NCBI RefSeq assembly: GCF_963853765.1
Contig: NC_088854.1
Span: 41,912,001-41,976,000 of the forward strand
Direction of reading: 5' to 3'
DNA from: Magallana gigas
Lineage: Eukaryota
DNA: 64,000 nucleotides
Shown here: positions 32,162-63,085 of the stretch, one piece after another
How positions within the stretch are numbered: position 1 is the stretch's first letter
Layout of the letters: each line of letters opens with the position of its first letter
Notes under the pieces: model-generated
The model's database searches: none
What the model was told of the DNA's origin: nothing
The model's input: the letters and a program-made list of their open reading frames with translations, nothing else
Program-made: the position numbers and the translations under genes

Positions 32162-35100
32162 ATTATATTTTACTATACAATTAGTAAGTGTATAAAATGA
32201 TGTTTGATTTCCACAAGAGCTTGTAACCACCTCACCTGGTTCTATGGTTAACACAGTGCCTGGCTGTAACTTTTTTTCCTTCGATACTAATGGTGTATCA
32301 TGAAGATCCATTCCAAGATAATGGCCTACATGATGAGGACAGAACCTGTCAGCCCCCTACAAAAAATGATAAAACTCTCCATAAACATATTTCCAAAATA
32401 TTAATATTTTGAAAGATAACACAATGTCAATAGAGCCACAGGCTTTCGATAAAAAAAATGCTAATTTATTCATTTGAAACCTGGTTAAAGGGATACACAA
32501 CATACCCGGTATATTTGAATGAAAAAAATCAAAATATGATAAACATATATCCAGCATACCGGTATATTAATGTTAATGTTGTTCAAATATGAACATTTGC
32601 ATGTTATAAAAAAATGCCAAGGGAAAAAAAAAAAATAGCCCATATTAACCCTATCAAACTGCTTCCCCTCAAGTTTTAAGTCCAAGAACCCCATGACTTG
32701 GAGGTATTCCCCGATGATTGTTATCATCCTCCTGTATATGTCATTCAGGCTGTATTGTGGTGTACACATCTGAATACATGCCTCCTGTACGAGTTGTACA
32801 AGTCCAATGATGACCTTCTGCTCATAGGTCAAATCTGTGGAGATATTAGGAAACTCAAAAATTACTCAGCAATGACATGGTGGTCTTTGACATATGCTTT
32901 ATCTTATTTACTACAAAATTTTCCCCCCAAAAAAACAAGAAATGCTTTTGATACATACAATGTTTATGCTGACTTGTGGCAAATATGAAATAAGTCAACC
33001 TTTTTCCAAGAATTTTGTAACTTTTTTTTATGACAATACCGGTATATATTTTACATCCAAAATAGTTTAACCCTTGACCTATTAACATTTGACCTCAAAA
33101 TCAATAGGGGTACCAGTGTGTCAAGTTTGATGTCCTTTCAAAGATTCTCAAGAAATTGAGTAGGCAACACTTAATCAAACTGTTTGACCTAATGAAATGA
33201 AAATGAAGAGGGGTCTTCTACTCCCTAAGTGGCACCAATGTTTCAAGTTTTGCACCAATTTTTGACATCTATATTTCTTGCAAAGAGTTCCAAGAGATAC
33301 AGGTCAGGAAACTTGGTCTATTGACCAAGAGATGTAAAACAATACGCCCTCTTTATTTTTGCCACACTTTATAAATGCTCTACCACAGTACTTGAAAAAT
33401 TGAGGACCCTCGTGATATCCGTGGTATATCCCTTGTATTCACAGCCAGCATCTATCAGCAGAAGCTCTCTTGGGTCTATCTTGTAGTTGTTTTGTACATA
33501 GTGTATTGTGGTTCCTCTGTTGCCTCCTACAATTAAACAAAAAATTACCGGTACATGTAATTTCTTTATTAAAAAGAAATTTAGAAGCTGTAATAAAATT
33601 AAAGGCAGTTAAGGACAATAGTTTTGGGCTCAGAGTGTTAAGATGGATTTTTGTGTAATAAGAACTAGAAGAAGTAATACCATATGCATCCAATATATTG
33701 ATAATGCCCTATTGGAATAGAGGGGTAGTTAGGCATACAAAAATGAGTTTTGTTTGTTGTGCCAAAAATTTCAAAAAAATTAAAAATGCAATCGGCAGGT
33801 TTTTCTATAATTTAATTTTTTGGGCAAGGTTTGCAAAGGGGAATACCGGTAGATTTTATCTTAAAATTGAAAAATGAGTTATTCCCCTTTTTAAAATGGC
33901 AATAATATAATGTTGAAGCCTTTGACCTGAGGAGCAAAAGAATGAATACATTACCAGTATTTTTTTTTTTTGGCCTTATAAAAGATTTGGCCTCACTAAA
34001 AATTACCTGCAATAACAGGAATATACGCTAGTCGCCCTCCATTCAACTGACAGACATATTCCATTACTGCTTGAATTTCATACTCAAACAAAGGACTGTT
34101 CTGAAAAAAGATTAATTTACCAGGAGATGTATATATATTCTCAGTATTTGATACAAAGTTCAAAACAACTCTGTCTAACAATTGAGACAGATGCTTGGAA
34201 GCTGAAAAAGGATGGACGGTCATTTCCATTTAAAGACTTTTTTTAACTCTCAGGAAAAGAAGAGATATGTTTAATTAATGTATCAAAATATGTATAAATT
34301 AGTTCAAATAATAAGCTACAAAAATCTAGAAACTTCCTTTACAAAATGATACCAGTATATAATACCGGTAGTCAGAAAAATCACATTTAATATTTTTCCG
34401 TGCGAGACCAAACTGCTGACCTTTGACCTCTTTGACTGCCATTCATCAATCATGTGATCAACAGCAGCAAACGCTGCCTCGGTTATCTCCATACTTTTCC
34501 TTATGAGAGCGATTTCACCTGGCGATTTTACTACTCGAAGCGACTGAACGAAGAGATCACAGCTCTCAAGTTTCTTGTACTTTCCCTGCCGCAAAAAATC
34601 GGCCATCACTGATTTATGAAAATCTGGATTTACAGCCTTTTGGTAGTTATACCACAGAGAAAATTTACTATTATCTGTCACAAAAGTAGACAGGAAACTA
34701 GCAATGTCTTTTGTGAACTTCACTTCATCAACTCCTGTTGATCTTGCTATACTGTCTTCACCCTCAAATTCACCGTCCCAGATTCTCTGATGCTCAAAAG
34801 GTTGAGGAACAAACAAAATCGATTTGAAATTCTCTTCTTTTCCTGATTCAGTGAACAAGATTAAAACACAGTTTGGCTTTGGATAGCCACAGAGATAGTT
34901 GAAGTCTGTATTCTGTCGGAAGGGGTAGAGAATTTGGTCGCTATAGTATGCCGGGGGCGCAGCTGGGACACAGAGGAGGAGGTTACGAGAAGTTCTCCAA
35001 GGTTCACTATCCAAACACAGCTTTATCAAATTCTTCCTTCTAGTTTTGTATTCTTCTACTGTAATATCTGATGGATCCTTTGAAAGCCCTTCGAGTTTTG

Positions 35101-47680: not shown

Positions 47681-48288
47681 TGGAAGACAAATGGTGTATT
47701 TATTACTTTCCAATAGAGATCGAAATATTTGAATAATTGTTTTCTACAATTTTTCACTTTATATTATTATATTTGTGACACATTTAATCTTCAAGTGAAA
47801 TTATATATTTCAAAGTGATTAATAATAATAAAACATTTCAAAATCATAGCGATCAATTCAATTTATCTATTCATGGAAATTCTCAAGGTTGTAAAAAGTA
47901 TTAGCTTTAAATTTGTGTTGTAAAACTGTATAAAATAAAAGGTTCAGATCACTAAAATTCTGGATTGTTTGTTTGTTCAATTTTCAAATTTGCCACAAAT
48001 ACATATATAGGAACCGTTGTCAAACTGGTAAAGTCCGTTTTTCTTCATGCTCAAAACTCATCACTGTTGATAACCATGTCTGTATTTCTTTCTAAAACTG
48101 CATCATTAAAATTGACCAAGACTAGTAAATTCTTTATTAGGCTTTTAATGAAAAAAATCTCATTTACAACCCCACAACTTTTGTTAATTATATTTATCAA
48201 GGTGCGTCGATAGTAATACATGTACCAAGATCGCATGATGTAAACTGTAATGCACTTGCAAATTGGATTGGGGGATCCCCTCTCAATT

Positions 48289-48930
48289 CGCGAAAATTCC
48301 AACTTTTTATTAAAGTCTTATTGTGAAATTAAAAATATGCATCAGACCATCGCGAAAATTCCAACTTTTTATTAAAGTCTTATTGTGAAATTTAAGATAT
48401 GCATCAGACCAACTCTTGCAAACAAATATATCCCTGTGACCCCCCTAAAAAATTTATAGGATCCATGCACGCAATGTAAAAGGAATACTACTTGCAGAAG
48501 AAAGTTAAAAAGGAGTGAAGTCATAAAAATTAATCTCTGTTGCTACATAAATGAGGGGACCCCTTTATGAGGAATATATCGTGTAAAGATACTTTCTTAA
48601 TATTTCATAGCCAATTTGTTTCTTGCGTTTCTTTTCGCGAAAATTCCAACTTTTTATTAAAGTCATATTGTGAAATTTAAGATATGCATCAGACCAATTC
48701 TTGCAAACAAATATATCCCTCTGACCCCCCTAAAAAATGAATAGGATCCATTCACGCAATGTAGAAAGGAATACTACATTTTGTTCTTACAGAAGAAAGT
48801 TAAAAAAGGAGTGAAGGCTTAAAAATTAATCTCTGTTGCTACATCAATGAGGGGACCCCTTAATGAGGAATATATCGTGTAACGATACTTTCTTAATATT
48901 TCATAGCCAATTTGTTTCTTGCGTTTATTT
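48289..48930. repeat. Local tandem duplications (62-bp doublet plus ~285-bp doublet)
   Basis: tcgcgaaaattccaactttttattaaagtc starts at ~48289, ~48351 and ~48635. Block 48351-48634 repeats from 48635 with a short insertion. Confidence 0.85.
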
Positions 48931-49791
48931 TCATGTAATCTGAGTATTCGCGCATTTTACGCGAATTTTTCTCCCATGAAAAGAGCAATCGCATGTATTT
49001 TACGAGAAATATTTTTTGCGTTAATTTTTGTGAGAAAATTTTTTGTGACGTTCTCGCTAGTGATCTTTCCATATAAATATTTTTGGCGTGAAAAGGTTAA
49101 TCGCATGTATTTCACGTGGAATTTTCTTGCACGAATTTTTGTTATATATATTGCTACGCGAAGTTCATGTGACCGATATCTTTCCATGTTTACCATAACC
49201 ATGCCATTTCCACATGAGACAAAATTGTTGTGCAAGTGATTTGTATATTTATCACATTCTGAATGCGGGGAATTTAACAGGCTTTGTACGCTCCCGTTCT
49301 TTGCTTCCATGGGACTTTGTTTTCTTGGGACCTGGGCCCTTTTTTTTTTTCAAAACACATCCTGTTTTGCCTTAGATTTTGATATTTGACAATCAATCAG
49401 TGCTATTTATTGATTTATAGGGACTTGTTTTCAACGTATTTCCTTCTTTTAGACAAGATTGTTATCTTGACATTTAATTTACCAAAACGCTTTGATAATT
49501 TCTGGATATACTTCATTAATTGAGAGTTGAAATAAATTCAGACTTTCTAGTAATACAAAATCAAAGAGACGACTTCGTAGAATCTATTATATTTATTTTT
49601 AAACATGAAACGTGAATTTAGTTCTGTTGAGATCAGTCAGGTTAATATATTTTTTATTCGATGTATTCAAGTGTGACTGTGTAAAATACGCGATGCATTG
49701 AGAAAAAAAAATCCACATCATTGAACAACTTAACATTTATATACAAAGGAGATGTACTTTGAAATACAATACATTGTTTTGTGCAGTCATC

Positions 49792-52700
49792 TCAAGGATA
49801 GGCATCTACCCTGATTTCTGGAATCGATGGCGGAGCTTTCACCTCCATTTCGTAGTCGGGTGGTAACATGGAGGCTGATTGAAGACTTTCCGCAGAGCCG
49901 TAGATCTGCCACGGTATAGAAGTATCAGCCACACTAAGGTCAATAAAAAGATCAACAAAATTGTCATCCACAACGGATAATCGACGAGAAGCTTCTTCCA
50001 CACTTAAATTGTTTTCAGTATTTTCCTTTACGATGCCGTTTAGTCCTTTTTGCCGTTTTTCCGTGTAGAGCTTCTTCTCGCGTCCCTCTTTCATGTATTT
50101 TTCTAGTTTGTCGTTAACTTTTCCTTTGTCGTCTGCGGGATTTGCCTTTTCACCTTCTGGGTCGTCAACTAAATTTCCTAAACTTTGTTTTCTTTCTTTA
50201 CCCCCTATATCGTCTTCCTCTTCGGGCTCAGATTCGACCTCATCCTCTCTCTTGAAAACAAAGTCATAAATAGGCCAATTTTGTTTAAAGTCGCAGATTA
50301 TTTCATCAATCTGCCCTTTGAAACTTAGCGTCTTTAAGTTGAGTTTCACGGATTTTCTTGGAAGAACATTTTTCAAGAGCATCGGCACAAATCCTCCAGC
50401 TAGGGTCGCTAAAGTCTGATTGGTCGACGAAACTTGGTGGACATTACCGAATGCCATGACAACGATCATAACAAAGAAAAGAAAAACAACAATAATGAGG
50501 AATTTTCCGGTTGCGCTTAGGAGATTTATATATACTGGTCCTGGCGCACCATGGACTCGGATTTCACAAACTTTCTGGAATAACCGGAGAGGAATTCTGG
50601 GAGTGTCGCAAGAATCCAGAAACAATAACAAATGACCGATCTTCCATGAAGGATCCTTCTTTTCAAATGTCAGAGTAGTTGGGATTTCATCCACCGCTTC
50701 AACCGGTTTCACCTGAAACGCCACATTTTCTTGCATGTTGGAGGGTAAACTAGCGACCGTCTTCAGATCTTCCACTCTGTCCATGATGTCTTCCACGACG
50801 CTCTTGTCAAAGGTGAGATAACTCTCGTACACATTATTGTAACAGTCGTGCATGTATACGATCACTAGAAGCGCCATTGAAACGTAACGAAGGGTACTTC
50901 CAGCGTTGATGATAATCCCCATCATCGTGAAAGCCATAACCTCTACAATCAAACCCACCGCTTCCACGATGATCAGGATGATGGCGTAAAGGACTGCTAG
51001 ACAGAACAGACCCACGATCCACTGAATCAAGAAGCGACGGACTGCGTTGAACTTCCCTTGACCCCACGCAGCGGCGTTGTTGTTTGTTTCATTCATGTGA
51101 GCTAGGCGGTTATGCATGCTTTTATCAATTTTAGACAACTTTTTCTGGACCTTTTTAAGTTTTTCTTTTTTCTTGCTTAAAGGTTTTTCGGGTTCTGATT
51201 CATAATTACATGTATCGTCATCAAACTTTTTTCGGGCATGAAATATAAGTCTATATGATAGATACAAAGTGGGAATGCAATAAAGAACAAAGATCACTGC
51301 ACACACAGGAAAAGCGATGAATGAATACAAAGGTGCAACGATTATAGCAATAAGTCCACATTTCTTGAAAGGCCACAAACCAATGCGCAACAAAACTTGC
51401 AAAACACTTGTTCGCGACACGTTGGCCATATCCTGCAAAGCGTCTCTCGCTATTGCTTTCAGTTTTTCCCTGACAGATTCGTCGGAAAATCCCAGGATTA
51501 CCCCAGAGAGAAAATAGAACACATAGGTGGCAATAAAAACGCCGTGTGTGGGAGAAAAATACTGGATAACGTTTCCTTTGTAGAAGTCAAACTCTTTCTT
51601 CAGTCCCAAGTTATCTATCACACGTTTCCGAAACATCACTTCGTCTTCTTCAAAGAAGTAATAGATGATAACGCGTACGTAGAATGGAAGTGGAATAAGT
51701 AACAGGAGTAGCACCTTAACAAGGGTTTGTACACACATGTGCCACGTGCACTTGGCTTTGATCATGGGTTCAAGGGATGCATACACGCTCAAGTCGCAAC
51801 ATTCCGTGAAAGGGTCCAGTCGTTTGATTTTACAACGGATAAGGTTGTCGTACAAGGTCCTGAAGATCCCGGTCGGTGGGTCGTTGTCAGGGATGATCCT
51901 CTTTCCTTTTACTGTGACTCTTAGCTCGGGTACACTGATAGGAACGATTTCATCCATCGGGCATTCCTCTAATTTCTCACGGAACCGCCTCCAATCGGCT
52001 ATGTCTTCCAGCGTCAGCCTCTTTTTGTATCTGACGGAAGTCTGAGTACTCTCAGTCACAAACATTTTGAGCTTGAGCTCTTTGGAAAGCTTCACGGCAT
52101 ACTCCGCGGCTACATAGGAGGCGTTGTACATCTGGGCCGGCATAATCAGCGGTGCAAAGAAAAACACCATCACCTTAACCAACGTAATGCACATGTGCAG
52201 CAGTAGTATCCAGCCCTGTTGAACTTCGTCGCTGCATGTGATGCTATTGTCGGGGTTTTGATTACAGCAGCGGTTGATAAACTCCGCATAGCCATCGTTG
52301 TCCTTCACGACCTCGTTACAGACGTACACTGTCCTTTCTGTTCGTGTCTCAAATTGTATTTTGGTGCCGGACTTTTCTTCTAGGCGGAAGTTGTCTAAAA
52401 TTAGGTCACGGATCAGTTGGATTCTCCCGGAAGCAGTGAGATTGTAAAAGCATCCAAACGGACGGTCAATTAACACAACATTATGGTGTTCTACACCAAT
52501 GGTCAAAATAGACATGGACAGAACGTCATAATGAAAAGAGAGCATTAACAACGTGCGGCCATGTTGCGTGCGTGTTCGATGCCACCGCCATGGTTTGTAG
52601 TTGTAGGTCTGATCCGTTCTTAAAGGGTCATTGGAATAATTAAACAGCTGAAAATTGAACTCCGCGAGAACAACTTTAGGATCGTCCAGAAATTTGGCGA

Positions 52701-52845
52701 AAGTTTCGTCTTGCAGAGTTATGACGCATCGATTTGGTGGTGCGATGGGGGGCGCCTGCTGCCCAGGGGTCAGTGTTGTCGTGGGGGTGCTACTGGTTAA
52801 CCCGGAAATGACGAACAAGAACCATGTCAACACGCATGTCTTCAT
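49792..52845 (-). CDS. Uncharacterised 1017-aa multipass membrane protein (signal peptide, Cys-containing ectodomain, ~9-11 hydrophobic segments, acidic tail); single coding exon
   Basis: Uninterrupted 3054-nt ORF with visibly higher GC than its flanks. Hydrophobic N-terminus MKTCVLTWFLFVISGLTSS. Splice acceptor tttgtag 5 nt before the ATG. No family recognised. Confidence 0.9.
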   Translation of the reverse strand: MKTCVLTWFLFVISGLTSSTPTTTLTPGQQAPPIAPPNRCVITLQDETFAKFLDDPKVVLAEFNFQLFNYSNDPLRTDQTYNYKPWRWHRTRTQHGRTLLMLSFHYDVLSMSILTIGVEHHNVVLIDRPFGCFYNLTASGRIQLIRDLILDNFRLEEKSGTKIQFETRTERTVYVCNEVVKDNDGYAEFINRCCNQNPDNSITCSDEVQQGWILLLHMCITLVKVMVFFFAPLIMPAQMYNASYVAAEYAVKLSKELKLKMFVTESTQTSVRYKKRLTLEDIADWRRFREKLEECPMDEIVPISVPELRVTVKGKRIIPDNDPPTGIFRTLYDNLIRCKIKRLDPFTECCDLSVYASLEPMIKAKCTWHMCVQTLVKVLLLLLIPLPFYVRVIIYYFFEEDEVMFRKRVIDNLGLKKEFDFYKGNVIQYFSPTHGVFIATYVFYFLSGVILGFSDESVREKLKAIARDALQDMANVSRTSVLQVLLRIGLWPFKKCGLIAIIVAPLYSFIAFPVCAVIFVLYCIPTLYLSYRLIFHARKKFDDDTCNYESEPEKPLSKKKEKLKKVQKKLSKIDKSMHNRLAHMNETNNNAAAWGQGKFNAVRRFLIQWIVGLFCLAVLYAIILIIVEAVGLIVEVMAFTMMGIIINAGSTLRYVSMALLVIVYMHDCYNNVYESYLTFDKSVVEDIMDRVEDLKTVASLPSNMQENVAFQVKPVEAVDEIPTTLTFEKKDPSWKIGHLLLFLDSCDTPRIPLRLFQKVCEIRVHGAPGPVYINLLSATGKFLIIVVFLFFVMIVVMAFGNVHQVSSTNQTLATLAGGFVPMLLKNVLPRKSVKLNLKTLSFKGQIDEIICDFKQNWPIYDFVFKREDEVESEPEEEDDIGGKERKQSLGNLVDDPEGEKANPADDKGKVNDKLEKYMKEGREKKLYTEKRQKGLNGIVKENTENNLSVEEASRRLSVVDDNFVDLFIDLSVADTSIPWQIYGSAESLQSASMLPPDYEMEVKAPPSIPEIRVDAYP

Positions 52846-53182
52846 GATTTCTACAAAGACACGTGTTGCAGTTATTTTACTTTTAAACGAAAACTTGTTT
52901 ACTACTCATAAAATTCAGTAGCATGATGACATTACAGAAAAAGAGCGGAAACTGTTTTATTATACCGGTATTTTAAAAATAAGTTCGTAATTATAAAATT
53001 AATTTTAAACACACTTTCTCCATTATTATTGTAAACAAAATGAATAAGATATTTTTGCTAAAAAAAAAGTCATTTATTTAACCACATCATACTACTTTAA
53101 AAATCTAGAAATCATTCAATTTGTTTTCATCTACTGCGATGCGTTTTATTTAGTTTAATTGAGAATTATCTGCATACATTAC

Positions 53183-53233
53183 CTCGACTGGTCTCTAGTG
53201 TCGTTCCAAACTAATACCCAAGTCGGCGATGAC
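53183..53233 (-). other. Probable non-coding 5' UTR exon of the 1017-aa gene
   Basis: ttttctcag|51 nt with no ATG|gtaatg. Confidence 0.55.
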
Positions 53234-53843
53234 CTGAGAAAATGAATGACAGGTATTTAAATCCGGTTTTATAAAGCTACGTGGGTTAACACTTTATTAT
53301 GTCATCTGCACAACCTGAAGCCACCTCAGTATTATCCCATATCCAATAGAAGAAATCTTTTTGTGCAATTTCATTGTCTATTTTATAAACCAGATTTGAA
53401 AATATTTCTTTTCACCCATCAATCAGCTACGTCGCACGAGTTTTATTTTGGAAAAAAAAAATCTTTTTCGATGATCCATCAACTACACAGGATTTTTTCG
53501 ATTAGCATTATTATTATTAATGGTAATACCTGAGTTTTTAATCAGACAAATATGTCGCTCCCTGCCTACGCTTATCCTAATCTATAGCTATATTTGTACA
53601 TGCGTTTGGGATACGAGGCAACCTTAATTTAACGAACGCGATGGTCCATTGGTTTTTAGGTGAATTTCATTATACATAATGGAGTCATTATTATAAATCA
53701 GTTTCTGTACCATTACAGATCAAAAGTAAGTTCTCTAACAGACAAAATCCTATTCGCATTCTTCTGCTAATTTGATGATAAACTAGAACTTCAATTTGGT
53801 GTTTGAACTGATCAAGTTGAATTAAACAAATCTTCATATAGTG

Positions 53844-53983
53844 GCTCATCCAGCTAAATAAAAAAAAACCTGTGGATACAATTCTAATCCAGTCTCATCC
53901 AGCTAAATAAATTACTGTGGACACAATTCTAATTCAGGCTCATCCAGCTAAAAAAATTACTGCGAACACAATTCTAATTTCAG
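53844..53983. repeat. ~45-49-bp tandem repeat, 3 copies
   Basis: ctcatccagctaaa...ctgtggacacaattctaat units at 53845, 53894 and 53939. Confidence 0.85.
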
Positions 53984-55617
53984 GTAAGATTTCTACCTGG
54001 TTTCATATCTCATAACAGGTAAAACTGTCTACCTGTTTCTTTAAACACTGTGAGCATATCGGCGAAGATTTCGTTGTGATAAATTAGTCGATACTTTTCC
54101 ATTACCTGCATGAAGCTAGAAAATACTCCAGATATCGTTTTAAATTAACATTAAATCCGTTTGTGCTTGGAGATTTAGGAATGATTCGAACTTTTTGACA
54201 ATGACCTTTTTCATATTTTGTTAACATGTATTTCTTTTTCAGTCTGTGGAAAGCAAGGCGTTATAAATCGCTGAAAGATTCGTGCAGCCAATGCACAGCG
54301 ATTCGTCATTTTCGGAACCTCGGCGTTGTTAAGTCTTTCTGCACCTGTACTTTGAGCGAATCTGATGATTTATTTAGATTGATCTTAGCAATAGTCATCT
54401 GTTGACAGAAATCTCCCCCATTTCTTTATGTGTCCCTACTCAAGGCAACCTTTTTAAACATTCTTTTGAGCAGAGGCGTGAAATTTTTTACTCTAAAATT
54501 GTGAACTTAATTCAATCTGCGGTAAAATAAACCCGAAAAATCGCTCAGTAAGAGTGCTTCAATTAACCTGAATAAAAATAGATTACATTCTAAGTGGGAC
54601 ACGGGTGCTTAGTGAGTTTTTGATACGGACCCCCCCCCCCCATATCCCATATTTATCTACATCCACTAGTCAATGTATGACTACGAACAACTATAAAATT
54701 TGTGAAGAATTCAGGTATGAGTCAAATGATCTACATGTACGCGTAAGAAACATAAAATGACGAGCTAGTATTAGAATAAATATGCTTTACATCCACACTC
54801 GAATGATTTTTTATAGCGACAAACGGCAATTCATTTTTTTTTTCAATTCAAATGGTCCTGAACATGTACAGAATTCCAGTTATAATAAATGAACGTAAAT
54901 CTCACAACAAATCCATCATTTATCATAGTCTATACAACTTTTATAACCCTCGCGCTTGTTTACTTATTATGATTTATCTTTTGAACTCGGAAACATAAAC
55001 ATTAAATTTTCCTCTCTCTTTGCCTAGCATAAAAAGATAGCAGAAGTTTGAGGACTGAAAACTTTAATTTACAATGTCCTCTTTCATTGATTAAAAGGTT
55101 ACGACTCTCGTATAAGCCTATCATCTCAGTTCAAAATGGCCCCCTTATAGAAGATCTCAGTAGACCATTGCCGTTGTACTGTCGAATGCAGAGGAAAGTT
55201 TTGGCGACAATCCATATTCTGAATATCACTTTTAAAAATTCAGATATAAAATGAGTAAAAATAATTTTTAAAAAAGTTATTATGTCATAATTCTAACAGA
55301 TTGTAAGTAAAATTCAAATCAAATGGATGGGGTCTTGTAAGAAAAAAATTATATACACTCTGTGTATGCTCACTTTAAAAAAAAAACGATATCATTTTTT
55401 TTGTGAATTGTATATATTCATTCATACATTTTCACACCATTCAACTTTTAAGTAGAGGGGAAATACAACACCCATTTAATAGGGTTTTTTCTCTCAAACA
55501 TAAGATTAGCATTGTAGTAATATGCATCACCCAATATCAATTCTCCCCTCTACTGAACCACAAAGTCGCTTGGACCCGCCGTCTCCAACACCTTGAAGTC
55601 ATTCACTTCATCTCTGC

Positions 55618-55618
<1 letters not shown>

Positions 55619-55700
<82 letters not shown>
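55619..55700. repeat. Compound (TA)n(GA)33 microsatellite
   Basis: Read directly. Confidence 0.95.
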
Positions 55701-55704
<4 letters not shown>

Positions 55705-56210
55705 CATCCATGTGCATAAATTTGAGATAAAATCTCAGATTTCCTTTATAAAAATGGAATAAAATCAAATTTAGGTAAAAATTTAGATGATTTTGTGGTA
55801 AAATCTCGAATTTGAGGATGAGAGTTTTGATAAGGAAAGTTGATAATGGTGGTGTTCTACGCCGTTTTAAAAGTTACATGTACAATGTCATGCAAATACC
55901 AAGCGTTAATCATTTCATGTAGTTTAGTAAACCTCCGCTTAAGTTCGTTATCCACATTAACCCAAACTTAATCATCTCTAAAGATATGGACCCACTGCAT
56001 TACTTAGAATCGTGTCCCAATATTAAGACACCCTGCATACAATTGTATACCCAAATCACTAAATGCAGAGACCGCAAAACAAAACCCGTGGCTACAAATC
56101 TTAGTTTCTATTGATTTAACTCTCAAAATGCATTCCACGGTTTGTCGCGATTTATTTTCTTTTTAAAAAGAGGACTGGGTTTTTTTTTTAAATGTTTATG
56201 CCCAAGATCA

Positions 56211-56340
56211 GGCCCCGGGGCCATAAAACTTAGACGAGCTCACTTTTGATCTAAGTCTTACTTTTTCACTATAAGTTCCTTTCGTAATAGTGAGACTTAG
56301 ATCAAAAGTAAGCTCGTCTAAGTTTTATGGCCCCAGGGCC
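56211..56340. mobile_element. Foldback MITE
   Basis: ggggccataaaacttagacgagct..cttttgatctaagtct ... agacttagatcaaaag..agctcgtctaagttttatggcccc. Confidence 0.75.
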
Positions 56341-57800
56341 AGTAGATGTAAGCAACTGTAACAATTTAAAAAAAAAACATTTTCTGAATAATGGCATTAA
56401 CATCCATTCGTCAGTCGAGTAAGGCTGGGAAGGTAGGGCCCGCTGGGGCTATCAAAGAAACAGCATCTAGAGCTATCTGATTTAAAAATGTAAATTTATT
56501 TCATGTAAATTTCCCCCGTTTCCTTATTTTCATTGAGACACAGAATAAATGATATGGTCATAAAACTGAAACATTTTTGGCTTCGTTCGTACTGTCAATA
56601 CGTATATTAACCATCTTAAAAATTTAGAGTATTTTAAATATTTTTATTACATTTTTTTTATCAGATAAGTTTTGCCAACTAATATTATTCCCTTACTTTA
56701 AATTCCATTCACATTTTTAATCTTTATGTACTATTTCAAGACTAACAAATGTAAAAAATAAAAGAGTTCAAAGTCCATGCATTATTATTATTATTGTGTA
56801 AAAATAAATTCTCCATGGCATTTTAAAAAAAAAAATATGTTAAGACAGATTTTACCTTGATGAGAGAAAAAGTAACGTTCGGTTCCAATAAAAGGCAACA
56901 AATTATAAACTCATCTTCGGAAGAGTAATTTCGGAATCTCCTCTCCACCTTTCCTTGGTACAGACAACCCACCCAAGATCCTCACGGCAACGCACCCACA
57001 TGTCTCCAGAGCGAATCACGGACTGACTCTACAAGCAAAAACACCTGTTTTTATCAGCATGTGCTTGTAGAATATACCCGGCCTTGTTGACACAACATCG
57101 CTAACTTTCTCTAAAACTCTCAAGTGATAGGGGGAGTTGGACGATATTTTTAAGTTGAGGTACATGTATTAAGTGATCAATGTTCTGAAGAGTTTGGAGT
57201 AAGTTAAACAATGATGTCATTTTGATTTCTTATTTAAATATCATGTACATTGTGATGTAAAAATTGTTTGAGCATTTTAAAAGTTAGATCATTAGAGTGC
57301 TGATCTAAGTAAACATGAAGTTAGTTTATGTGAAATAGATCTTCAGATTTCATGTTTGTCGTAAATTATGGCTGATTTCCGCAAGGTGTAATTCACCCAT
57401 AGATTGACATTTAAAAAATACATTTACGGGGATGTTTGAGGTATTCCGAATTACTCGGCGATTCTTGACAGTTGCTGCATATTGCATATATATCCAAGAA
57501 TGAAATTATCCAATTATTATTTAGAAGAATCACGTCTAAACAAATATTTATCGAATCATCAGAAAAAAAGATACCTCGTAATAGCGCGAGAGAATAATGT
57601 CGCTTTCACGAGAAAAAGCCTCGAAAATACAAAGTATACATATATATTTACATTTTCCAGTGTCTTTGCCTGTGATAACACTGCGTATCGATTTTGTACT
57701 ATATAACCCATAATACCAATGACGCCAAATTAAGGCACCAGCGGGGTTTGCCTATTTATATTTAAATCGTACGATGGCTTAAAATGATATAAATATAAGT

Positions 57801-57953
57801 AATAAGGAATCATTTTTTGAATATTATAAGGTGATAATTTCGGTCGGGGCGAGATCAAATCTATGATAAAGCTCTTCGGGCTTTATTGGATTTGATCACG
57901 CCCCGGCCAAAATTATCACCTCATAATATTCAAAGAATGATTTCTTATTCCTT
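57801..57953. mobile_element. Palindromic foldback MITE with cttcgg loop
   Basis: aataaggaatcatt..ttgaatattat.aggtgataattt...taaagc-tcttcgg-gcttta...aaattatcacctcataatattcaaagaatgatt..ttatt. Confidence 0.75.
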
Positions 57954-58916
57954 ATGTACTCCGAGTAACCGTTTTAGGAATTTCACGATAAAAGTGCGCT
58001 AACATAATATAAGTGTTAATCTTAGAACCGGTATCCTTAATTAAATTATTATTCATATTATTTTGTACCCAAAGCTTCGTGTCAAAATCGAGACTTTGTC
58101 CCTAAAATCGGGAAAATATATATATATCTATAAAAATATAGTTTGTACAAGTGTGTTAACCAGTAAAAGTCAAACTAATTTTAAATTTTCTGTGCTTGTT
58201 TGGTAGTATAAGGGGTGGGATGGGGGCTTAACTTAGGGATTAGATAAAAATCAAATTTAATAGCTCGATCAGATTCCAACTCATGACCATCTGACATTAT
58301 TAACAAGAATTACACATGATTTATGCATGCAAAGCACACTATTTAATTTAATAGATGTAAAGTTACTAATGTTTTAATATACAATAAGTAGTATTGTTTA
58401 CTCAAAGTTTCAACAAATAAATAATTAGTTCAATTTCCATTTTTAAACAAAACACATAATAGTATAAACATGGACCAGGGCAGTGTAACATTTCTTCACT
58501 TTTAGATATTGGAGGTGTGGAATATCAATCTGAACTAAATATTTAATCTAGCAGCTGTACATGTGCGTAAAATATATTATCATATTATCTAGAAGTGAAG
58601 GCAATTCGCTGTAAAGTCGCTGTTGGAATGGAATGAATCTTTTTTTTATCCTCAGATCTGTTCTAGATAATTCAAACATTACTTTCTGTTAACATTAAAA
58701 AACAACAACAATTAACCAAAACTTGTTATTTTCAGATTTTGTAAGGAATACATGTATGTGTGTACAGGAGCGCGTCGTAATTAACATTTTGCATGGTCTC
58801 TTGATCAAAGTAACGTTCCTTCTGATAACTTACATATCGTCTCAGTTCTTTTCAGGCATTACTTTAAAGATGCAGGTTGCTGGTTATTTTATATGTACTG
58901 GTAAAATACATATCCT

Positions 58917-60377: not shown

Positions 60378-63085
60378 CTAACAAGTAACATATTTATTAT
60401 CTCTTTTAACAAACAGCGAAGGTTCTATAGAATCTTGTAACAATAGAGACTGCTTTAACGAATGCGGAAGTTCCTGCTTCTCCACAAACTCCTGTATGTC
60501 ATGTCTTTGCATGCGTCTTAGGTAATTCCTACATAGAACCCCTAAACTACGAGGTGTTTGCATGTGATCTAGCAACTGTCTCCGAATACTCTCACTTTTC
60601 GTATGTTTAATGATGAATTTAACGCTCTCGGGGTCTTCCTCAGCAATATCGTTTCCCGCCTCCAACAGGAAGTGAGCAATGGTGACGAAGTTCCGGCACA
60701 CTGCGTCACATAGCGACGAACGATGACGTGGCATAATTTTAGGGTCCGCAATCCAGTCCGTATAGTAAGTGTCTGACCCCCATAAAACAAGAACGGGACG
60801 GTCAACCTCCATCTTGACGTTTAAACTGAGCAGCATCTTCACGAGATTTAGGTTACCTTTGATGATGGCTATGTGTAGCGGGGTCATATATCCGGGCTCG
60901 GCGCTCTGTCTGTTAGGATCCGCCCCACACTGCAACAGGTGCTTTACCATTGCCTCGTCTTCGCGGTTTATGGACTCGTGCAATGGGTTGAACCCATGAC
61001 CTGCAGTATCGTTGATGTCAAGTCCTTTCAAAACAAGCTTGGATATGAATTCCTTCTTATTCACTCCTGCCAGGGTTAAAATCGTCATGAAGGGGCTAGA
61101 ATCAGTCTGCAGTTCTGCTTTCACAAGTAGATGCTTTCTCTCTAGTTCGTTTTTCAAGATGACACAAACATCTTTTAAATCTAAAATTCTCGCCAGATCG
61201 TACGAGGTCGTGCCGTATATTTTTCTGCTAATATCAGCTTTATGATCTAACAAAACGCGAACCATATCAGGGTTATTTTGCAGAGTGGCGTGGAATAATG
61301 GATCCTCCTCCACGGGACATAGATACTCAGGGCGATGATTGAGTTGAAAGCCATGTTTTAAAAGTAGCTTCAAAGAATTCACTTTGCCTAAAAGGACAAA
61401 AATGATTTTAATGAATATTTATCAATCAAATAGTGGAAGTCTAGGCTTTCCAATAGTCCGAAATAATTAATGTTTACGACTTTGATATTTGACAATTCTG
61501 GCATGCCAAGTATCAAAATCGCTAGCTGCAGGTCTGTAGCTCCCGGTCTGAAAAAATTCGGATGGACGACCTGGGAGCTACAGTGCCTCCCATAGTAAAA
61601 AAAACTGCAATTTACGGCTCACAAAAAATTGCGCTAGTTTTGGACTGATTAAATTATTTTCACACAAATTCTGTGAAAACAATTAGTACCATTAAATTCT
61701 TCAGACAATTTACTACTGATATTGTTACTTTACTTGCCTCAGACTTTCTCTGAAACATGCTAACCGACCTCCGAAAATAAAGTGTATTAATTTACGTCAT
61801 GTAAACAAACTGCACCACTTCATTTTACGGGGCTGGTGATGGTGTTTAAAAGAATATCAGAGGCAAGTAAAGTGACGATATCTGTAGTAAATTGTCCGAG
61901 GAAATTTTTGGAATCAAATATTTGTACAGAATGTGTTCGGAATTGAGTTTAATCAGTCCAAAACTAGCGCAATTTTTTGTGCGCCGTAAATTGCAGCTTT
62001 TTACTATGGGAGGCACTGTAGCTCCCAAGTCGTCCATCCGAATTTTTTCAGACCGGGGGCTACAGTCCTGCAGCTACAAAATCGCTAAAAAAAGCCAAGC
62101 TGATTCCGAAATCTCTGTCGTTTAACAGATGTTTCGGACTTGGCTTTACTTATATTATAGGTGTACTTACCTTTAACAACAGCTGAGTAAATCAGGGTAT
62201 GTTGCTGTTGTGGGGTATAAAAATCAGCATCACGTGTCTGGAGCACGCGCCCAGTGATGTAATCATCACCATAGATATCGGCCCGATACAGAGTTCCTGG
62301 AGTTGCCATGACGCCATTGTCTGTTAGAAGTTGGACCATTCTCTTGTTGTTCATTTCTACTGCGCAACACAATGCGCCCTTTTGGTACGAGTTTACAAAA
62401 TTCTTTTGCAGACTTTCCATTTTCAACAACATCTTAACGATTTCATCAGCATTTTCCAAAACTGCCAACATTAGAGCTGAATATCTTTCTTCTCCTCTGC
62501 AGCAGACGTTAACATTAATTTTCTTTGAGATCAAAAAATTAAATAATTTTATATCTTTGTTGTAGATTGCAAAATGGATCGGAGCAAATAATGTCGCTTT
62601 CGTTGTTTCGTTAAGAGAGCAGTCATGTTCATGAACTAGAAATTTGATGACTCTTAACTTCCCTAGAGCACATGCGCAGTGCAAAAACGTAGTTGCTGCA
62701 TGTTGCGGAACGTTGTCTGTTGTATGCTCCACGTGCGGACACCGTCCTTCCAATACCCATCCCGATAACTTTTCGATGTGAAATATGTGATTATTGTGGC
62801 GTAGTTTCTCGAACATTTGTCCACAAATGCACATTCGATTACGACTTTCGTACTCTGTAAAAGATCAAACACAATATTTGCATTGATGCAGAACAATTTC
62901 TTTTCATTCATAGAAATGCAAATATATGGAATATATGATGTCAGGTATTTACCGAATCCTAATTCCTTTTTCATAATGTCTTTGTTCATGGATAGCGTCC
63001 ATATGATTTCGTCCTCGTCCTTTGCAACCATACATTGTAAGATGGTGACCTGACGATGTCGGGTGGCAACATCGATCTCCGTCAT
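60378..63085 (-). CDS. Ankyrin-repeat and SOCS-box protein (ASB-like), 3 coding exons, ~608 aa
   Basis: Exons (minus) 63085-62953, 62854-62171, 61387-60378, all GT-AG and in frame. About 10-12 ankyrin-like repeats (TFLHCACALG, APIHFAIYN, NPLHESINRE, TPLHIAIIKGNLNLVKMLL). C-terminal SOCS box PRSLGVLCRNYLR...LPHSLKQSL. Confidence 0.88.
61523..62076. mobile_element. Mutator-like foldback element (~230-bp TIRs) in intron 2 of the ASB-like gene
   Basis: tagctgcagg...cctgcagcta with long mirrored arms. Exact 9-bp TSD CAAAATCGC at 61514-61522 and 62077-62085. Confidence 0.88.

What the first reader, a model, noticed from the sequence alone, without database searches (positions are those of the whole stretch)
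49792..53233. Orphan 1017-aa multipass membrane protein encoded by one coding exon
Seen: a signal peptide, a Thr/Pro linker, and a ~190-aa ectodomain with several Cys (VCNEVV...INRCC...ITC) and a KPWRWHR...GRTLLMLSFHYDVLS block. Then a first TM, a ~140-aa loop, clusters of long hydrophobic segments, a Lys-rich loop, an amphipathic GGFVP-containing segment, and an acidic tail with basic-Ser motifs (RKQS, RRLS). The CDS has no introns while the neighbouring genes have 3-14 coding exons, yet the 5' UTR is spliced. I recognise no GPCR, SLC, TRP, TMC or Cys-loop signature. Inference: a member of an uncharacterised invertebrate membrane family whose layout (ectodomain, many TMs, phosphorylatable tail) would suit a ligand-regulated channel, transporter or receptor. 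This is the best candidate here for an undescribed system.
Basis: partly seen in the sequence, partly recalled or inferred. Interest (0 to 1): 0.72.

Follow-up and report, generated by a model that had tools for sequence, protein, structure and literature searches.

The report
Conserved mollusc-annelid nine-helix membrane protein
This oyster gene is real, transcribed and strongly conserved. It is not an orphan but the orthologue of a large mollusc-and-annelid family of about-1000-residue multipass membrane proteins (Pfam DUF8415), whose function is unknown and whose confident predicted structure matches no solved structure.

Summary
The 1017-aa ORF (window 49792-52845, minus strand) exists as described. 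PolyA RNA reads and RNA contigs cover the whole CDS in sense. They confirm two GT..AG introns in the 5'UTR only and end 27 nt after an AATAAA.

"Orphan" is wrong. A profile search finds 973 cluster representatives (373 at E<=1e-30), tagged Pfam PF28478 = DUF8415. Every named member is a mollusc or an annelid. The window gene sits in an orthologue clade that mirrors mollusc phylogeny. The single coding exon is also seen in scallop, Capitella and a Haliotis paralogue, and nearly so in octopus.

Constraint is strong: dN/dS about 0.025 against an 85% orthologue, and 21 synonymous versus 8 non-synonymous polymorphisms.

No characterised family matches by Pfam, NCBIfam or PDB sequence. An AlphaFold2 model (pLDDT 88.3, pTM 0.83) shows an N-out, C-in nine-helix protein. 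It has a disulfide-rich alpha/beta ectodomain, a cytosolic part built from three segments, two very long helices and a disordered tail. It matches nothing in PDB or BFVD above background, but single domains could not be searched.

A conserved intramembrane polar stripe (E628, E635, T640, G643, N647; SxTNQ..GGxxP) makes an ion channel or ion-coupled transporter the likeliest role (about 0.4, inferred). No paper mentions the family.

The parts
56856..56969 (-). 5'UTR exon 1. Its 3' end at 56856 is defined by a GT donor. Its 5' end is at least 56969, and the true transcription start is not determined.
   Evidence: RNA contigs X5 and X11 run on past exon 2 for 24 and 112 nt. The first 30 nt of the overhang match uniquely at 56858-56887 with 3 mismatches, and a gtaaaa donor follows on the minus strand.
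53234..56855 (-). 5'UTR intron 1 (3622 nt, GT..AG). It holds a 45-nt tandem repeat and a MITE-like inverted repeat.
   Evidence: Overhang of the RNA contigs at 53235, the exon-1 match, and canonical splice dinucleotides read from the sequence.
53183..53233 (-). 5'UTR exon 2 (51 nt, no ATG).
   Evidence: Pieces of the RNA contigs lie at 53183-53235. An AG acceptor lies upstream and a GTAATG donor downstream.
52851..53182 (-). 5'UTR intron 2 (332 nt, GT..AG). It ends 5 nt before the ATG.
   Evidence: Joint 52850->53183 in 5 polyA raw reads (X20, X21) and 2 RNA contigs.
49626..52850 (-). Exon 3: 5 nt of UTR, the whole CDS and a 166-nt 3'UTR.
   Evidence: Single uninterrupted pieces of the RNA contigs at 49626/7-52850. 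Sense-strand read cover runs along the whole CDS.
49792..52845 (-). CDS, 1017 codons plus stop. A at -3, and an in-frame stop upstream in the spliced UTR.
52792..52845 (-). Signal-peptide-like N-terminal hydrophobic helix (residues 1-18).
   Evidence: Sequence and model helix 2-17. Hydrophobic N-termini are present in most relatives. Cleavage is inferred, not tested.
52735..52791 (-). Thr/Pro-rich disordered linker (residues 19-37).
   Evidence: pLDDT below 50 at residues 20-37; composition.
52216..52734 (-). Extracellular alpha/beta domain (residues 38-210). It has six conserved Cys (40, 132, 176, 193, 194, 204) and N-x-S/T sites at 69 and 135.
   Evidence: pLDDT about 88-96. Cys conserved at 87-98% over 142 sequences. 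No Pfam hit on the isolated domain.
52144..52215 (-). TM1 (residues 211-234).
   Evidence: Hydropathy 2.39 and model helix 211-234.
51745..52143 (-). Cytosolic segment 1 (residues 235-367). It has two long beta strands (247-262, 300-312), helices, and conserved C338, C349 and C350.
   Evidence: No PLAT or other Pfam hit at E<=10.
51220..51744 (-). TM2-TM5 with a cytosolic helical insert (residues 368-542). Conserved R391, E399, P432, H434, P525.
51055..51219 (-). Lys-rich, poorly conserved cytosolic loop (residues 543-597).
   Evidence: K+R 13 in residues 543-600. Conservation 0.55 bits, the lowest of the regions measured within residues 38-866; the tail was not measured.
50776..51054 (-). Hairpin of two very long helices (residues 598-646 and 648-690). 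It carries the conserved polar stripe E628, E635, T640, G643, N647 and Y654, Y664, Y676.
   Evidence: Model helices of 49 and 43 residues at pLDDT 87-96. Conservation 90-99% on one helical face. dN 0.013.
50536..50775 (-). Cytosolic segment 2 (residues 691-770). Five short strands plus a helix, with the motif D-x-P-R-I-P..G-x-P-G-P.
   Evidence: dN 0.015.
50365..50535 (-). TM8 and kinked TM9 (residues 771-827) with the near-invariant S806-x-T-N-Q..T814..G817-G818-x-x-P821. This is the most conserved part of the protein.
   Evidence: 2.47 bits mean conservation; P768 and P821 100%, G818 97%.
50248..50364 (-). Cytosolic segment 3 (residues 828-866): a helix plus a long strand, with conserved W857 and D861.
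49795..50247 (-). Disordered acidic/Lys-rich tail (residues 867-1017). It has RKQS and RRLS sites and a conserved terminal V-D-L-F-I-D-L motif.
   Evidence: pLDDT mostly below 50 in model 1. The motif is conserved in alignments A1-A3. Most non-synonymous polymorphisms fall here.
49653..49658 (-). AATAAA polyadenylation signal, 27 nt upstream of the ends of the RNA contigs.

Best explanation
SHOWN. The locus is a genuine, transcribed, three-exon oyster gene whose last exon holds the entire CDS. Its product is the orthologue of a conserved family (Pfam DUF8415) found in molluscs and annelids. The family evolves under strong purifying selection.

PREDICTED with high model confidence. The protein is N-out, C-in, with nine membrane helices:
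- a cleavable signal sequence and a flexible Thr/Pro linker;
- a disulfide-bonded, probably glycosylated alpha/beta ectodomain;
- a cytosolic part built from three separate segments (after TM1, after TM7 and after TM9);
- an unusual hairpin of 49- and 43-residue helices;
- a long disordered tail with basic-Ser sites.

INFERRED. The protein most likely moves ions or a small polar solute across a membrane, as a cation channel or an ion-coupled transporter. The family's best-conserved residues form a polar stripe buried in the membrane. That stripe comprises two glutamates seven residues apart on the conserved face of the long helix, followed by T640, G643 and N647. The adjacent last helix carries S-x-T-N-Q..T..G-G-x-x-P with a Gly-Gly/Pro kink. 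Such residues are costly in a bilayer unless they bind or conduct something. The ectodomain and the phosphorylatable tail would then act as the regulatory inputs.

Confidence that it is a real, functional DUF8415 orthologue is about 0.95. The confidence given below is for the channel/transporter mechanism.
For: Real gene:
- ORF.
- Sense polyA RNA cover, two UTR splice joints, and a contig end after AATAAA.

Family:
- 62 word-search hits, 59 of them tagged PF28478, which is named DUF8415.
- 973 representatives at E<=1e-3.
- Named members are only molluscs and annelids.
- The orthologue clade mirrors mollusc phylogeny.

Constraint:
- dN/dS 0.025, with dN about 0.01 in helices 598-668, loop 3 and TM8-9.
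- 21 synonymous versus 8 non-synonymous polymorphisms, with only 2 non-synonymous in the core.

Architecture:
- AF2 pLDDT 88.3, pTM 0.83.
- Hydropathy.
- Lys-rich cytosolic loops.

Polar stripe:
- E628 97%, E635 90% acidic, G643 99%, N647 91%, S806 96%, G818 97% and P821 100% over 142 sequences of 22-70% identity.
- Conservation has helical periodicity, and E628 and E635 lie on the conserved face.
Against: - No sequence or structural similarity to any known channel or transporter.
- No internal repeat of the kind common in transporters.
- No oligomer model, so no pore has been seen.
- Model coordinates could not be inspected, so whether the conserved polar residues face each other is not known.
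- Buried acidic residues can instead pair with conserved basic residues (R391, R532, K825) for folding or subunit assembly.
- The subcellular location is unknown.
Confidence: 0.4

Rival explanations
1. A cell-surface receptor or sensor with no transport function. The ectodomain binds a ligand or a partner. The helical bundle relays the change to the composite cytosolic domain and the phosphorylatable tail, which recruit signalling or trafficking proteins.
For: - A conserved disulfide-rich ectodomain of about 170 residues sits behind a signal sequence.
- The cytosolic part is sizeable and conserved (loop 1, loop 3, post-TM9), with conserved C338/C349/C350 and W857/D861.
- The disordered tail carries RKQS and RRLS sites and a conserved terminal V-D-L-F-I-D-L motif.
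Against: - The most conserved parts are the membrane helices TM8-9 and the long hairpin (2.47 and 1.93 bits). The ectodomain is less conserved (1.47 bits). That is the reverse of what is usual when the ligand-binding domain is the functional core.
- No 7TM, kinase, TIR, death or other signalling domain is detected.
Confidence: 0.25
2. A resident protein of an internal membrane (ER, Golgi or lysosome) with a housekeeping role, such as a lipid scramblase or transporter, a membrane-embedded enzyme, or a cargo/assembly factor. The 'ectodomain' would then face the lumen.
For: - The orthologue is essentially single-copy per mollusc species and extremely constrained, as is usual for housekeeping machinery.
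- Conserved R391, E399 and H434 lie at the lumenal/extracellular membrane interface and could form a catalytic or lipid-head-group site.
- Long tilted helices are also seen in lipid-handling proteins (general knowledge, not tested here).
Against: - A housekeeping function restricted to two phyla, with no detectable counterpart elsewhere, is unusual.
- No match to MBOAT, DHHC, TMEM16/OSCA, glycosyltransferase or other membrane-enzyme families.
- There is a second large mollusc paralogue clade. That fits diversified peripheral functions better than core machinery.
Confidence: 0.2
3. A divergent polycystin-1-like protein: an ectodomain, TM1, a PLAT domain in the first cytosolic loop, then a channel-like helical bundle. 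This was suggested by the UniRef name 'PLAT domain-containing protein' for two gastropod members.
For: - UniRef names of P0031 (Elysia) and P0034 (Arion).
- The position of a beta-containing loop directly after TM1 resembles the place of PLAT in polycystin-1 (general knowledge).
Against: - Pfam PLAT does not hit any of 24 members at E<=0.1.
- It does not hit the isolated loop of the window protein, P0031 or P0034 at E<=10.
- The loop is modelled as two long strands plus helices, not an eight-stranded sandwich.
- No polycystin or TRP chain scores above background against either model.
- The protein has nine helices, not eleven.
Confidence: 0.03
4. A non-functional retrocopy, captured mobile-element or viral gene, or a chance ORF.
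For: An intronless 3-kb CDS among multi-exon neighbours.
Against: - The single coding exon is an old, family-wide trait, seen in scallop, Capitella and a Haliotis paralogue, nearly so in octopus, and with only about 440 nt of extra span in Owenia.
- The gene has its own spliced 5'UTR and polyA signal.
- dN/dS is 0.025.
- No repeats bracket it.
- No viral structural match.
Confidence: 0.01

Closest known systems
Pfam PF28478 (DUF8415), a domain of unknown function
   Same: The 99.5%-identical protein P0001 and 59 of the 62 relatives found, all full-length orthologues among them, carry this precomputed Pfam tag. The window protein is the oyster orthologue within this family.
   Different: Nothing is known about the family: no name beyond DUF, no paper and no solved structure. 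The local Pfam copy lacks the model, so membership rests on the precomputed tag of near-identical and orthologous proteins rather than on a scan of the window protein itself.
Polycystin-1 family (PKD1/PKD1L/PKDREJ): ectodomain, TM1, cytosolic PLAT, channel-like bundle
   Same: The overall order is alike: a signal sequence, an extracellular domain, one helix, a cytosolic loop of about 130 residues with beta strands, then a multi-helix bundle. Two members carry a UniRef 'PLAT' name.
   Different: No PLAT, GPS/GAIN, PKD or ion-transport Pfam signal. Nine helices rather than eleven. No structural match to polycystin or TRP chains above background.
TMEM16 / OSCA-TMEM63 / TMC superfamily of channels and scramblases
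   Same: Similar size (about 800-1000 residues), about ten helices including unusually long tilted ones, a cytosolic domain inserted between helices, and conserved acidic/Asn residues inside the membrane. This is a resemblance from general knowledge.
Type IV ABC exporter transmembrane domains (MsbA, TAP, PCAT1)
   Same: The weakest of leads. The profile aligns residues 511-632 to MsbA TM helices at E about 0.09, and Foldseek/VIA list these chains against residues 380-628.
   Different: E-values and Z (at most 4.1, rmsd 7-13 A) are at background. There is no nucleotide-binding domain. The resemblance is that of any pair of long helices.
Spiralian-restricted genes lophotrochin and trochin (Wu et al. 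2020, PMC7441323)
   Same: These are also lineage-restricted genes conserved for about 500 My in spiralians, showing that such genes can have specific roles.
   Different: Lophotrochin carries DUF4476 and is not this family. The paper's text mentions no transmembrane protein. The Capitella member of DUF8415 is not found in the held supplements.

Membership tests
Pfam DUF8415 (PF28478) | Significant match to the family HMM over most of the protein | tested here: met
   This is indirect, because the local Pfam copy lacks the model. P0001 (1012 of 1017 residues identical) and 59 of the 62 relatives found carry the precomputed tag PF28478, named DUF8415. A profile of the orthologues retrieves 973 relatives.
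Pfam DUF8415 (PF28478) | Orthology: placement inside the family tree with species-tree-like branching | tested here: met
   FastTree of 142 members: the window protein lies in a 32-row clade (support 99) ordered chiton, cephalopods, gastropods, bivalves. It is a FastTree topology only, with a midpoint root.
Polycystin-1-like | PLAT domain in the first cytosolic loop | tested here: not met
   No PF01477 hit in 24 members at E<=0.1, nor in the isolated loops of the window protein, P0031 and P0034 at E<=10. The modelled loop is not a beta sandwich.
Polycystin-1-like | GAIN/GPS site before TM1 and an 11-helix core with a TRP-like channel domain | tested here: not met
GPCR / 7TM receptors | Seven-helix bundle with a 7tm family signature | tested here: not met
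TMEM16 / OSCA / TMC | Pfam Anoctamin, RSN1_7TM/PHM7_cyt or TMC signature; ten-helix fold | tested here: not met
SID1 / ABC exporter TMD / MFS and other transporters | Family HMM or fold match; internal structural repeat | tested here: not met
Any family with a solved structure, at single-domain level (ectodomain, cytosolic part) | Domain-level fold match | not testable with these tools
The fold searches report that residues outside 378-651 and 646-834 were 'barely tested'.

The most novel reading that the evidence does not exclude
DUF8415 is a new structural class of ion channel or ion-coupled transporter that arose in the lophotrochozoan stem lineage. In this reading the pore or binding site is formed by the E628/E635/N647 stripe of an exceptionally long helix and by the G-G-x-x-P kink of the last helix. 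The disulfide-rich ectodomain and the phosphorylatable tail would regulate it. The membrane fold would be one not yet represented in the Protein Data Bank.
Probability: 0.3. Interest if true: 0.8.

Novelty: new member of a known kind. Interest (0 to 1): 0.5.

Why it matters
Molluscs and annelids hold a large share of animal diversity, yet their lineage-specific membrane proteins are almost unstudied. This family has several unusual properties:
- It is about 1000 residues long and has been kept since the mollusc-annelid ancestor, hundreds of millions of years ago.
- It is among the most constrained genes one can measure (dN about 0.01 in its core).
- It has expanded into several paralogue clades.
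- It is predicted with high confidence to adopt a nine-helix architecture that finds no counterpart among solved structures.

If it is a channel or transporter, it would add a new class to a short list. It could underlie physiology particular to these animals, such as shell or chaetal secretion, ciliary-band control, osmoregulation or chemosensation.

If it is not, it remains a well-defined target for structure determination. The practical gain here is that the 'orphan' is now placed in a family, with a gene model, a taxonomic range, a topology and a short list of residues to mutate.

Tried and rejected
1. Pfam, NCBIfam and PDB-sequence searches gave only noise. This covers the single protein, profiles of 24 and 142 sequences, and the isolated ectodomain, loop 1 and loop 3. 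Examples of the noise are Pex24p E 0.036, gamma carbonic anhydrase E 0.03, MsbA E 0.09 and phospholamban E 0.1.
2. The PLAT/polycystin lead from two UniRef names is rejected.
3. The first AF2 model from 24 sequences was too weak (pLDDT 55.7) and found nothing with Foldseek. The model from 76 sequences is good. It still matches nothing in PDB by Foldseek, by an exhaustive VIA alignment or by a second look. It matches nothing in BFVD either. Running the weaker model through the exhaustive search to probe other regions gave only generic helices.
4. P0001's 15 extra N-terminal residues were checked as possible evidence of splicing. They are the unspliced genomic sequence read upstream, so they are uninformative.
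5. Internal-repeat search by hhalign: none.
The AF2 input was reduced to 76 sequences. The larger Pfam scan was dropped.
7. The third word-indexed search, with the diverse alignment, returned only mollusc orthologues and did not widen the taxonomic range.
8. Literature: no paper holds PF28478, DUF8415 or twelve locus or accession identifiers of family members. Lophotrochin and trochin are not this family, and the held supplements did not list the Capitella member.
9. Retrocopy, mobile-element or viral origin is rejected.
10. The bacterial-type promoter scan at exon 1 is irrelevant to a eukaryote and is ignored.
Full report
OBSERVATION

The ORF listing finds a single 1017-aa ORF at window 49792..52845 on the minus strand. 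G+C rises to 0.43 over the ORF against about 0.33 around it.
- a hydrophobic N-terminus;
- a Thr/Pro stretch at residues 19-37;
- a Cys-containing domain up to residue 210, with the quoted motifs;
- a first hydrophobic helix at 211-234, followed by a 133-residue loop;
- clusters of long hydrophobic segments;
- a Lys-rich loop;
- the G-G-F-V-P segment;
- an acidic tail with RKQS and RRLS.

TRANSCRIPT

One read-laying run used two polyA raw-read runs and two RNA-contig runs of the same species label.
- Cover is continuous along the CDS, with first mates almost all on the plus strand. That is the pattern expected of a minus-strand RNA in common stranded libraries.
- No joint lies inside the CDS.
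- A joint 52850->53183 skips 332 nt with GT..AG ends on the minus strand. It is seen in 5 raw reads and both contigs.
- The contigs end at 49626/7, which is 27 nt past an AATAAA at 49653-49658.
- Both contigs run on beyond 53235 with letters that do not lie on the stretch.

The first 30 overhanging letters match the window uniquely at 56858-56887, with three polymorphic differences and a gtaaaa donor beside them.

The gene therefore has at least three exons:
- UTR exon 1, at least 56856-56969;
- UTR exon 2, 53183-53233;
- exon 3, 49626-52850, which holds the whole CDS.

The spliced UTR has an in-frame stop and no ATG in exon 2, and the start codon has A at -3. In one search I joined the 51-nt UTR exon to the first bases of exon 3 inside a script, only to read the frames. 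All protein searches used the single-exon CDS by reference.

NOT AN ORPHAN

The word-indexed search returned 62 relatives. They are full-length, at 40-85% identity, in bivalves, gastropods, cephalopods and a chiton. Two Ostrea paralogues score 28-29%. Of the 62, 59 carry the precomputed Pfam tag PF28478, which the locus tables name DUF8415. The local Pfam copy does not hold this model, which explains why the direct scan was blank.

An exhaustive profile search of 1.84 billion cluster representatives found 973 proteins at E<=0.001 and 373 at E<=1e-30. I looked up names for 30 representatives spread over the tree, and searched once more from an annelid member. Every name was a mollusc or an annelid (Owenia three times, Capitella, Paralvinella).

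A FastTree of 142 non-redundant full-length members shows four groups:
- The window protein sits in a 32-row clade (support 99). Its order follows mollusc phylogeny: chiton, cephalopods, gastropods, bivalves.
- The sister groups are two clades that contain the annelids.
- A separate 52-row clade holds mollusc paralogues, including one from Crassostrea gigas.

The tree uses a fast method and a midpoint root, so I draw no order of events from it.

I cannot exclude members in other phyla. Only 150 of the 973 hits were listed, and about three quarters of them have no name.

GENE STRUCTURE ACROSS THE FAMILY

- The scallop orthologue, the Capitella member and a Haliotis paralogue are each one uninterrupted ORF of exactly protein length.
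- In octopus a single 959-aa ORF holds nearly all of the 964-aa product.
- The Owenia model has about 440 nt of extra span.

The single coding exon is therefore old and family-wide, not a recent retrocopy. No repeats bracket the oyster gene.

CONSTRAINT

Against the 85%-identical orthologue, dN is 0.087 and dS is saturated at about 3.5. The ratio of 0.025 is only a rough figure, but it is far below 1. In helices 601-668, loop 3 and TM8-9, dN is about 0.01.

Of the 29 CDS polymorphisms visible in the RNA data, 21 are synonymous. Of the 8 non-synonymous ones, 6 lie in the signal sequence or at the C-terminal end (codons 865-949), and only 2 lie in the structured core.

RELATION TO CHARACTERISED FAMILIES

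There is nothing significant in any of these searches:
- Pfam or NCBIfam for the protein;
- Pfam for 24 members scanned singly;
- Pfam for the isolated ectodomain, loop 1 and loop 3;
- PDB sequences, with the protein or with profiles of 24 and 142 sequences.

Two UniRef entries call their member a 'PLAT domain-containing protein'. This suggested a polycystin-1-like layout, because PLAT follows TM1 in polycystin-1. The Pfam PLAT model does not hit any member or the isolated loops even at E<=10, and the loop is not modelled as a sandwich. I reject that reading.

STRUCTURE

With 24 sequences AlphaFold2 gave a weak model (pLDDT 55.7). With 76 sequences spanning 20-66% identity, residues 1-872 gave pLDDT 88.3 and pTM 0.83, with 574 residues at 90 or more. 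The secondary structure reads as follows:
- signal helix at 2-17, then a disordered linker;
- an alpha/beta domain at 41-206;
- TM1 at 211-234;
- a segment with two long strands (247-262, 300-312) and short helices;
- helices 368-412, 435-453, 456-489, 491-523 and 525-542;
- the Lys-rich loop;
- one continuous 49-residue helix (598-646), a turn at N647, and a 43-residue helix (648-690);
- a segment with five short strands and a helix (708-760);
- helix 771-803 and the kinked helix 807-818/820-827;
- a helix and a long strand (840-866).

Read together with hydropathy, this gives nine membrane passes, N-terminus outside and C-terminus inside. Loop 1, the Lys-rich loop, loop 3 and the tail are then all cytosolic. 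This fits the six conserved cysteines and the sequons of the N-terminal domain, and the basic loops. The topology is inferred. I had no topology predictor and no access to the coordinates.

FOLD SEARCHES

- Foldseek against PDB: no match at E<=0.001 for either model.
- BFVD viral structures: nothing.

My conclusion is limited accordingly. No solved chain resembles the protein as a whole or its membrane core above background.

CONSERVED RESIDUES

These figures are over 142 sequences.
- Ectodomain: C40, C132, C176, C193, C194 and C204 (87-98%).
- Loop 1: C338, C349 and C350 (94%). C760 in loop 3 is at 75%.
- Outer ends of TM2 and TM3: R391, E399, P432 and H434.
- Long helix: E628 (97%), E635 (90% acidic), T640, G643 (99%) and N647 (91%).
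- Its partner helix: Y654, Y664 and Y676.
- Before TM8: P768 and G769.
- Last helix: S806, T808, N809, Q810, T814, G817, G818 (97%), P821 (100%) and K825.

Conservation along eight of the nine helices peaks at 90-105 degrees per residue, as expected of helices with one buried face. E628 and E635 lie on that face. TM8-9 is the most conserved region (2.47 bits) and the Lys-rich loop the least among the regions measured within residues 38-866 (0.55). hhalign finds no internal repeat.

HOW IT MOST LIKELY WORKS

Shown: a real, expressed, constrained membrane protein of a lophotrochozoan family.

Inferred: the best-kept residues are polar or helix-breaking and sit inside the membrane. They comprise two glutamates one heptad apart, an Asn at the hairpin turn, and a Ser/Thr/Asn/Gln cluster with a Gly-Gly..Pro kink. 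The most economical reading is therefore a site that binds or conducts ions or a small polar solute, meaning a cation channel or an ion-coupled transporter. The ectodomain and the phosphorylatable tail would be its regulators.

I put this at about 0.4. The rivals are:
- a non-transporting receptor or sensor (0.25);
- a resident protein of internal membranes with a lipid-handling, enzymatic or assembly role (0.2);
- the polycystin-like reading (0.03);
- a non-functional copy (0.01).

The balance is left for roles not thought of.

NOVELTY

The protein and its family already sit in public databases as 'uncharacterized protein' and DUF8415. The window gene is thus a member of a catalogued kind, and I file it so. 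The kind itself is uncharacterised. No paper mentions it, there is no solved relative, and there is no detectable link to any characterised family. The interest lies in the family rather than in this locus.

OPERATORS' NOTES

- No N stretches were touched.
- Read laying was given 5,901 letters.

Noticed in passing
window 60378-61382 and 62085-62834, minus strand: Two large ORFs upstream of the gene encode ankyrin repeats (Ank_2 E 1.5e-26 and 3.2e-17). They are probably exons of one ankyrin-repeat gene on the same strand, ending just upstream of UTR exon 1. A DUF8415 relative in the sea slug Plakobranchus (P0038) is named 'ankyrin repeat and SOCS box protein 2'. This may reflect a conserved neighbourhood or a fused or mis-transferred annotation.
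   Followed up: no
window 53234-54021: In run X21, same-strand polyA reads lie inside UTR intron 1 at depth 1.2-2.6, comparable to the exons. They carry several variants and a 3-nt insertion. This could be a retained intron, an alternative longer first exon or promoter, or another haplotype.
   Followed up: no
window 50673-51066: A minority of read pairs in both polyA runs lie in the opposite orientation over this part of the CDS (depth 0.4-2.4). This could be a short antisense transcript or library noise.
   Followed up: no
window 53859-53993; 56211-56340; 57795-57955; 48288-48932: A 45-nt tandem repeat (3 copies) and a 55-nt inverted repeat (93% complementary, MITE-like) lie in UTR intron 1. 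A 67-nt inverted repeat lies upstream of exon 1, and tandem repeats of about 130 nt lie just downstream of the gene.
   Followed up: no
window 34319-35029, minus strand: This ORF has an aminopeptidase P N-terminal domain (AMP_N, E 1.4e-24).
   Followed up: partly
window 55403-55762, plus strand (inside UTR intron 1): A 119-aa ORF with low-complexity, Atrophin-like composition (E 6e-7, below the Pfam cut-off). It is most likely a chance ORF in repetitive DNA.
   Followed up: partly
P0013 and P0015 (Sinanodonta woodiana, same 166.7-Mb contig, consecutive locus tags 033060/033061): The freshwater mussel has two adjacent orthologues that are sisters in the tree, which indicates a recent tandem duplication of an otherwise mostly single-copy orthologue.
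   Followed up: no
P0039-P0052 (about 700-760 aa, ENA and Logan): A set of relatives at 51-55% identity covers only about profile positions 51-724 and stops before TM8-9. In those species the gene probably has an intron there, or the ORF call is truncated.
   Followed up: no
Crassostrea gigas has DUF8415 paralogues (P0063), so it might be one of them. I could not compare sequences.
   Followed up: no
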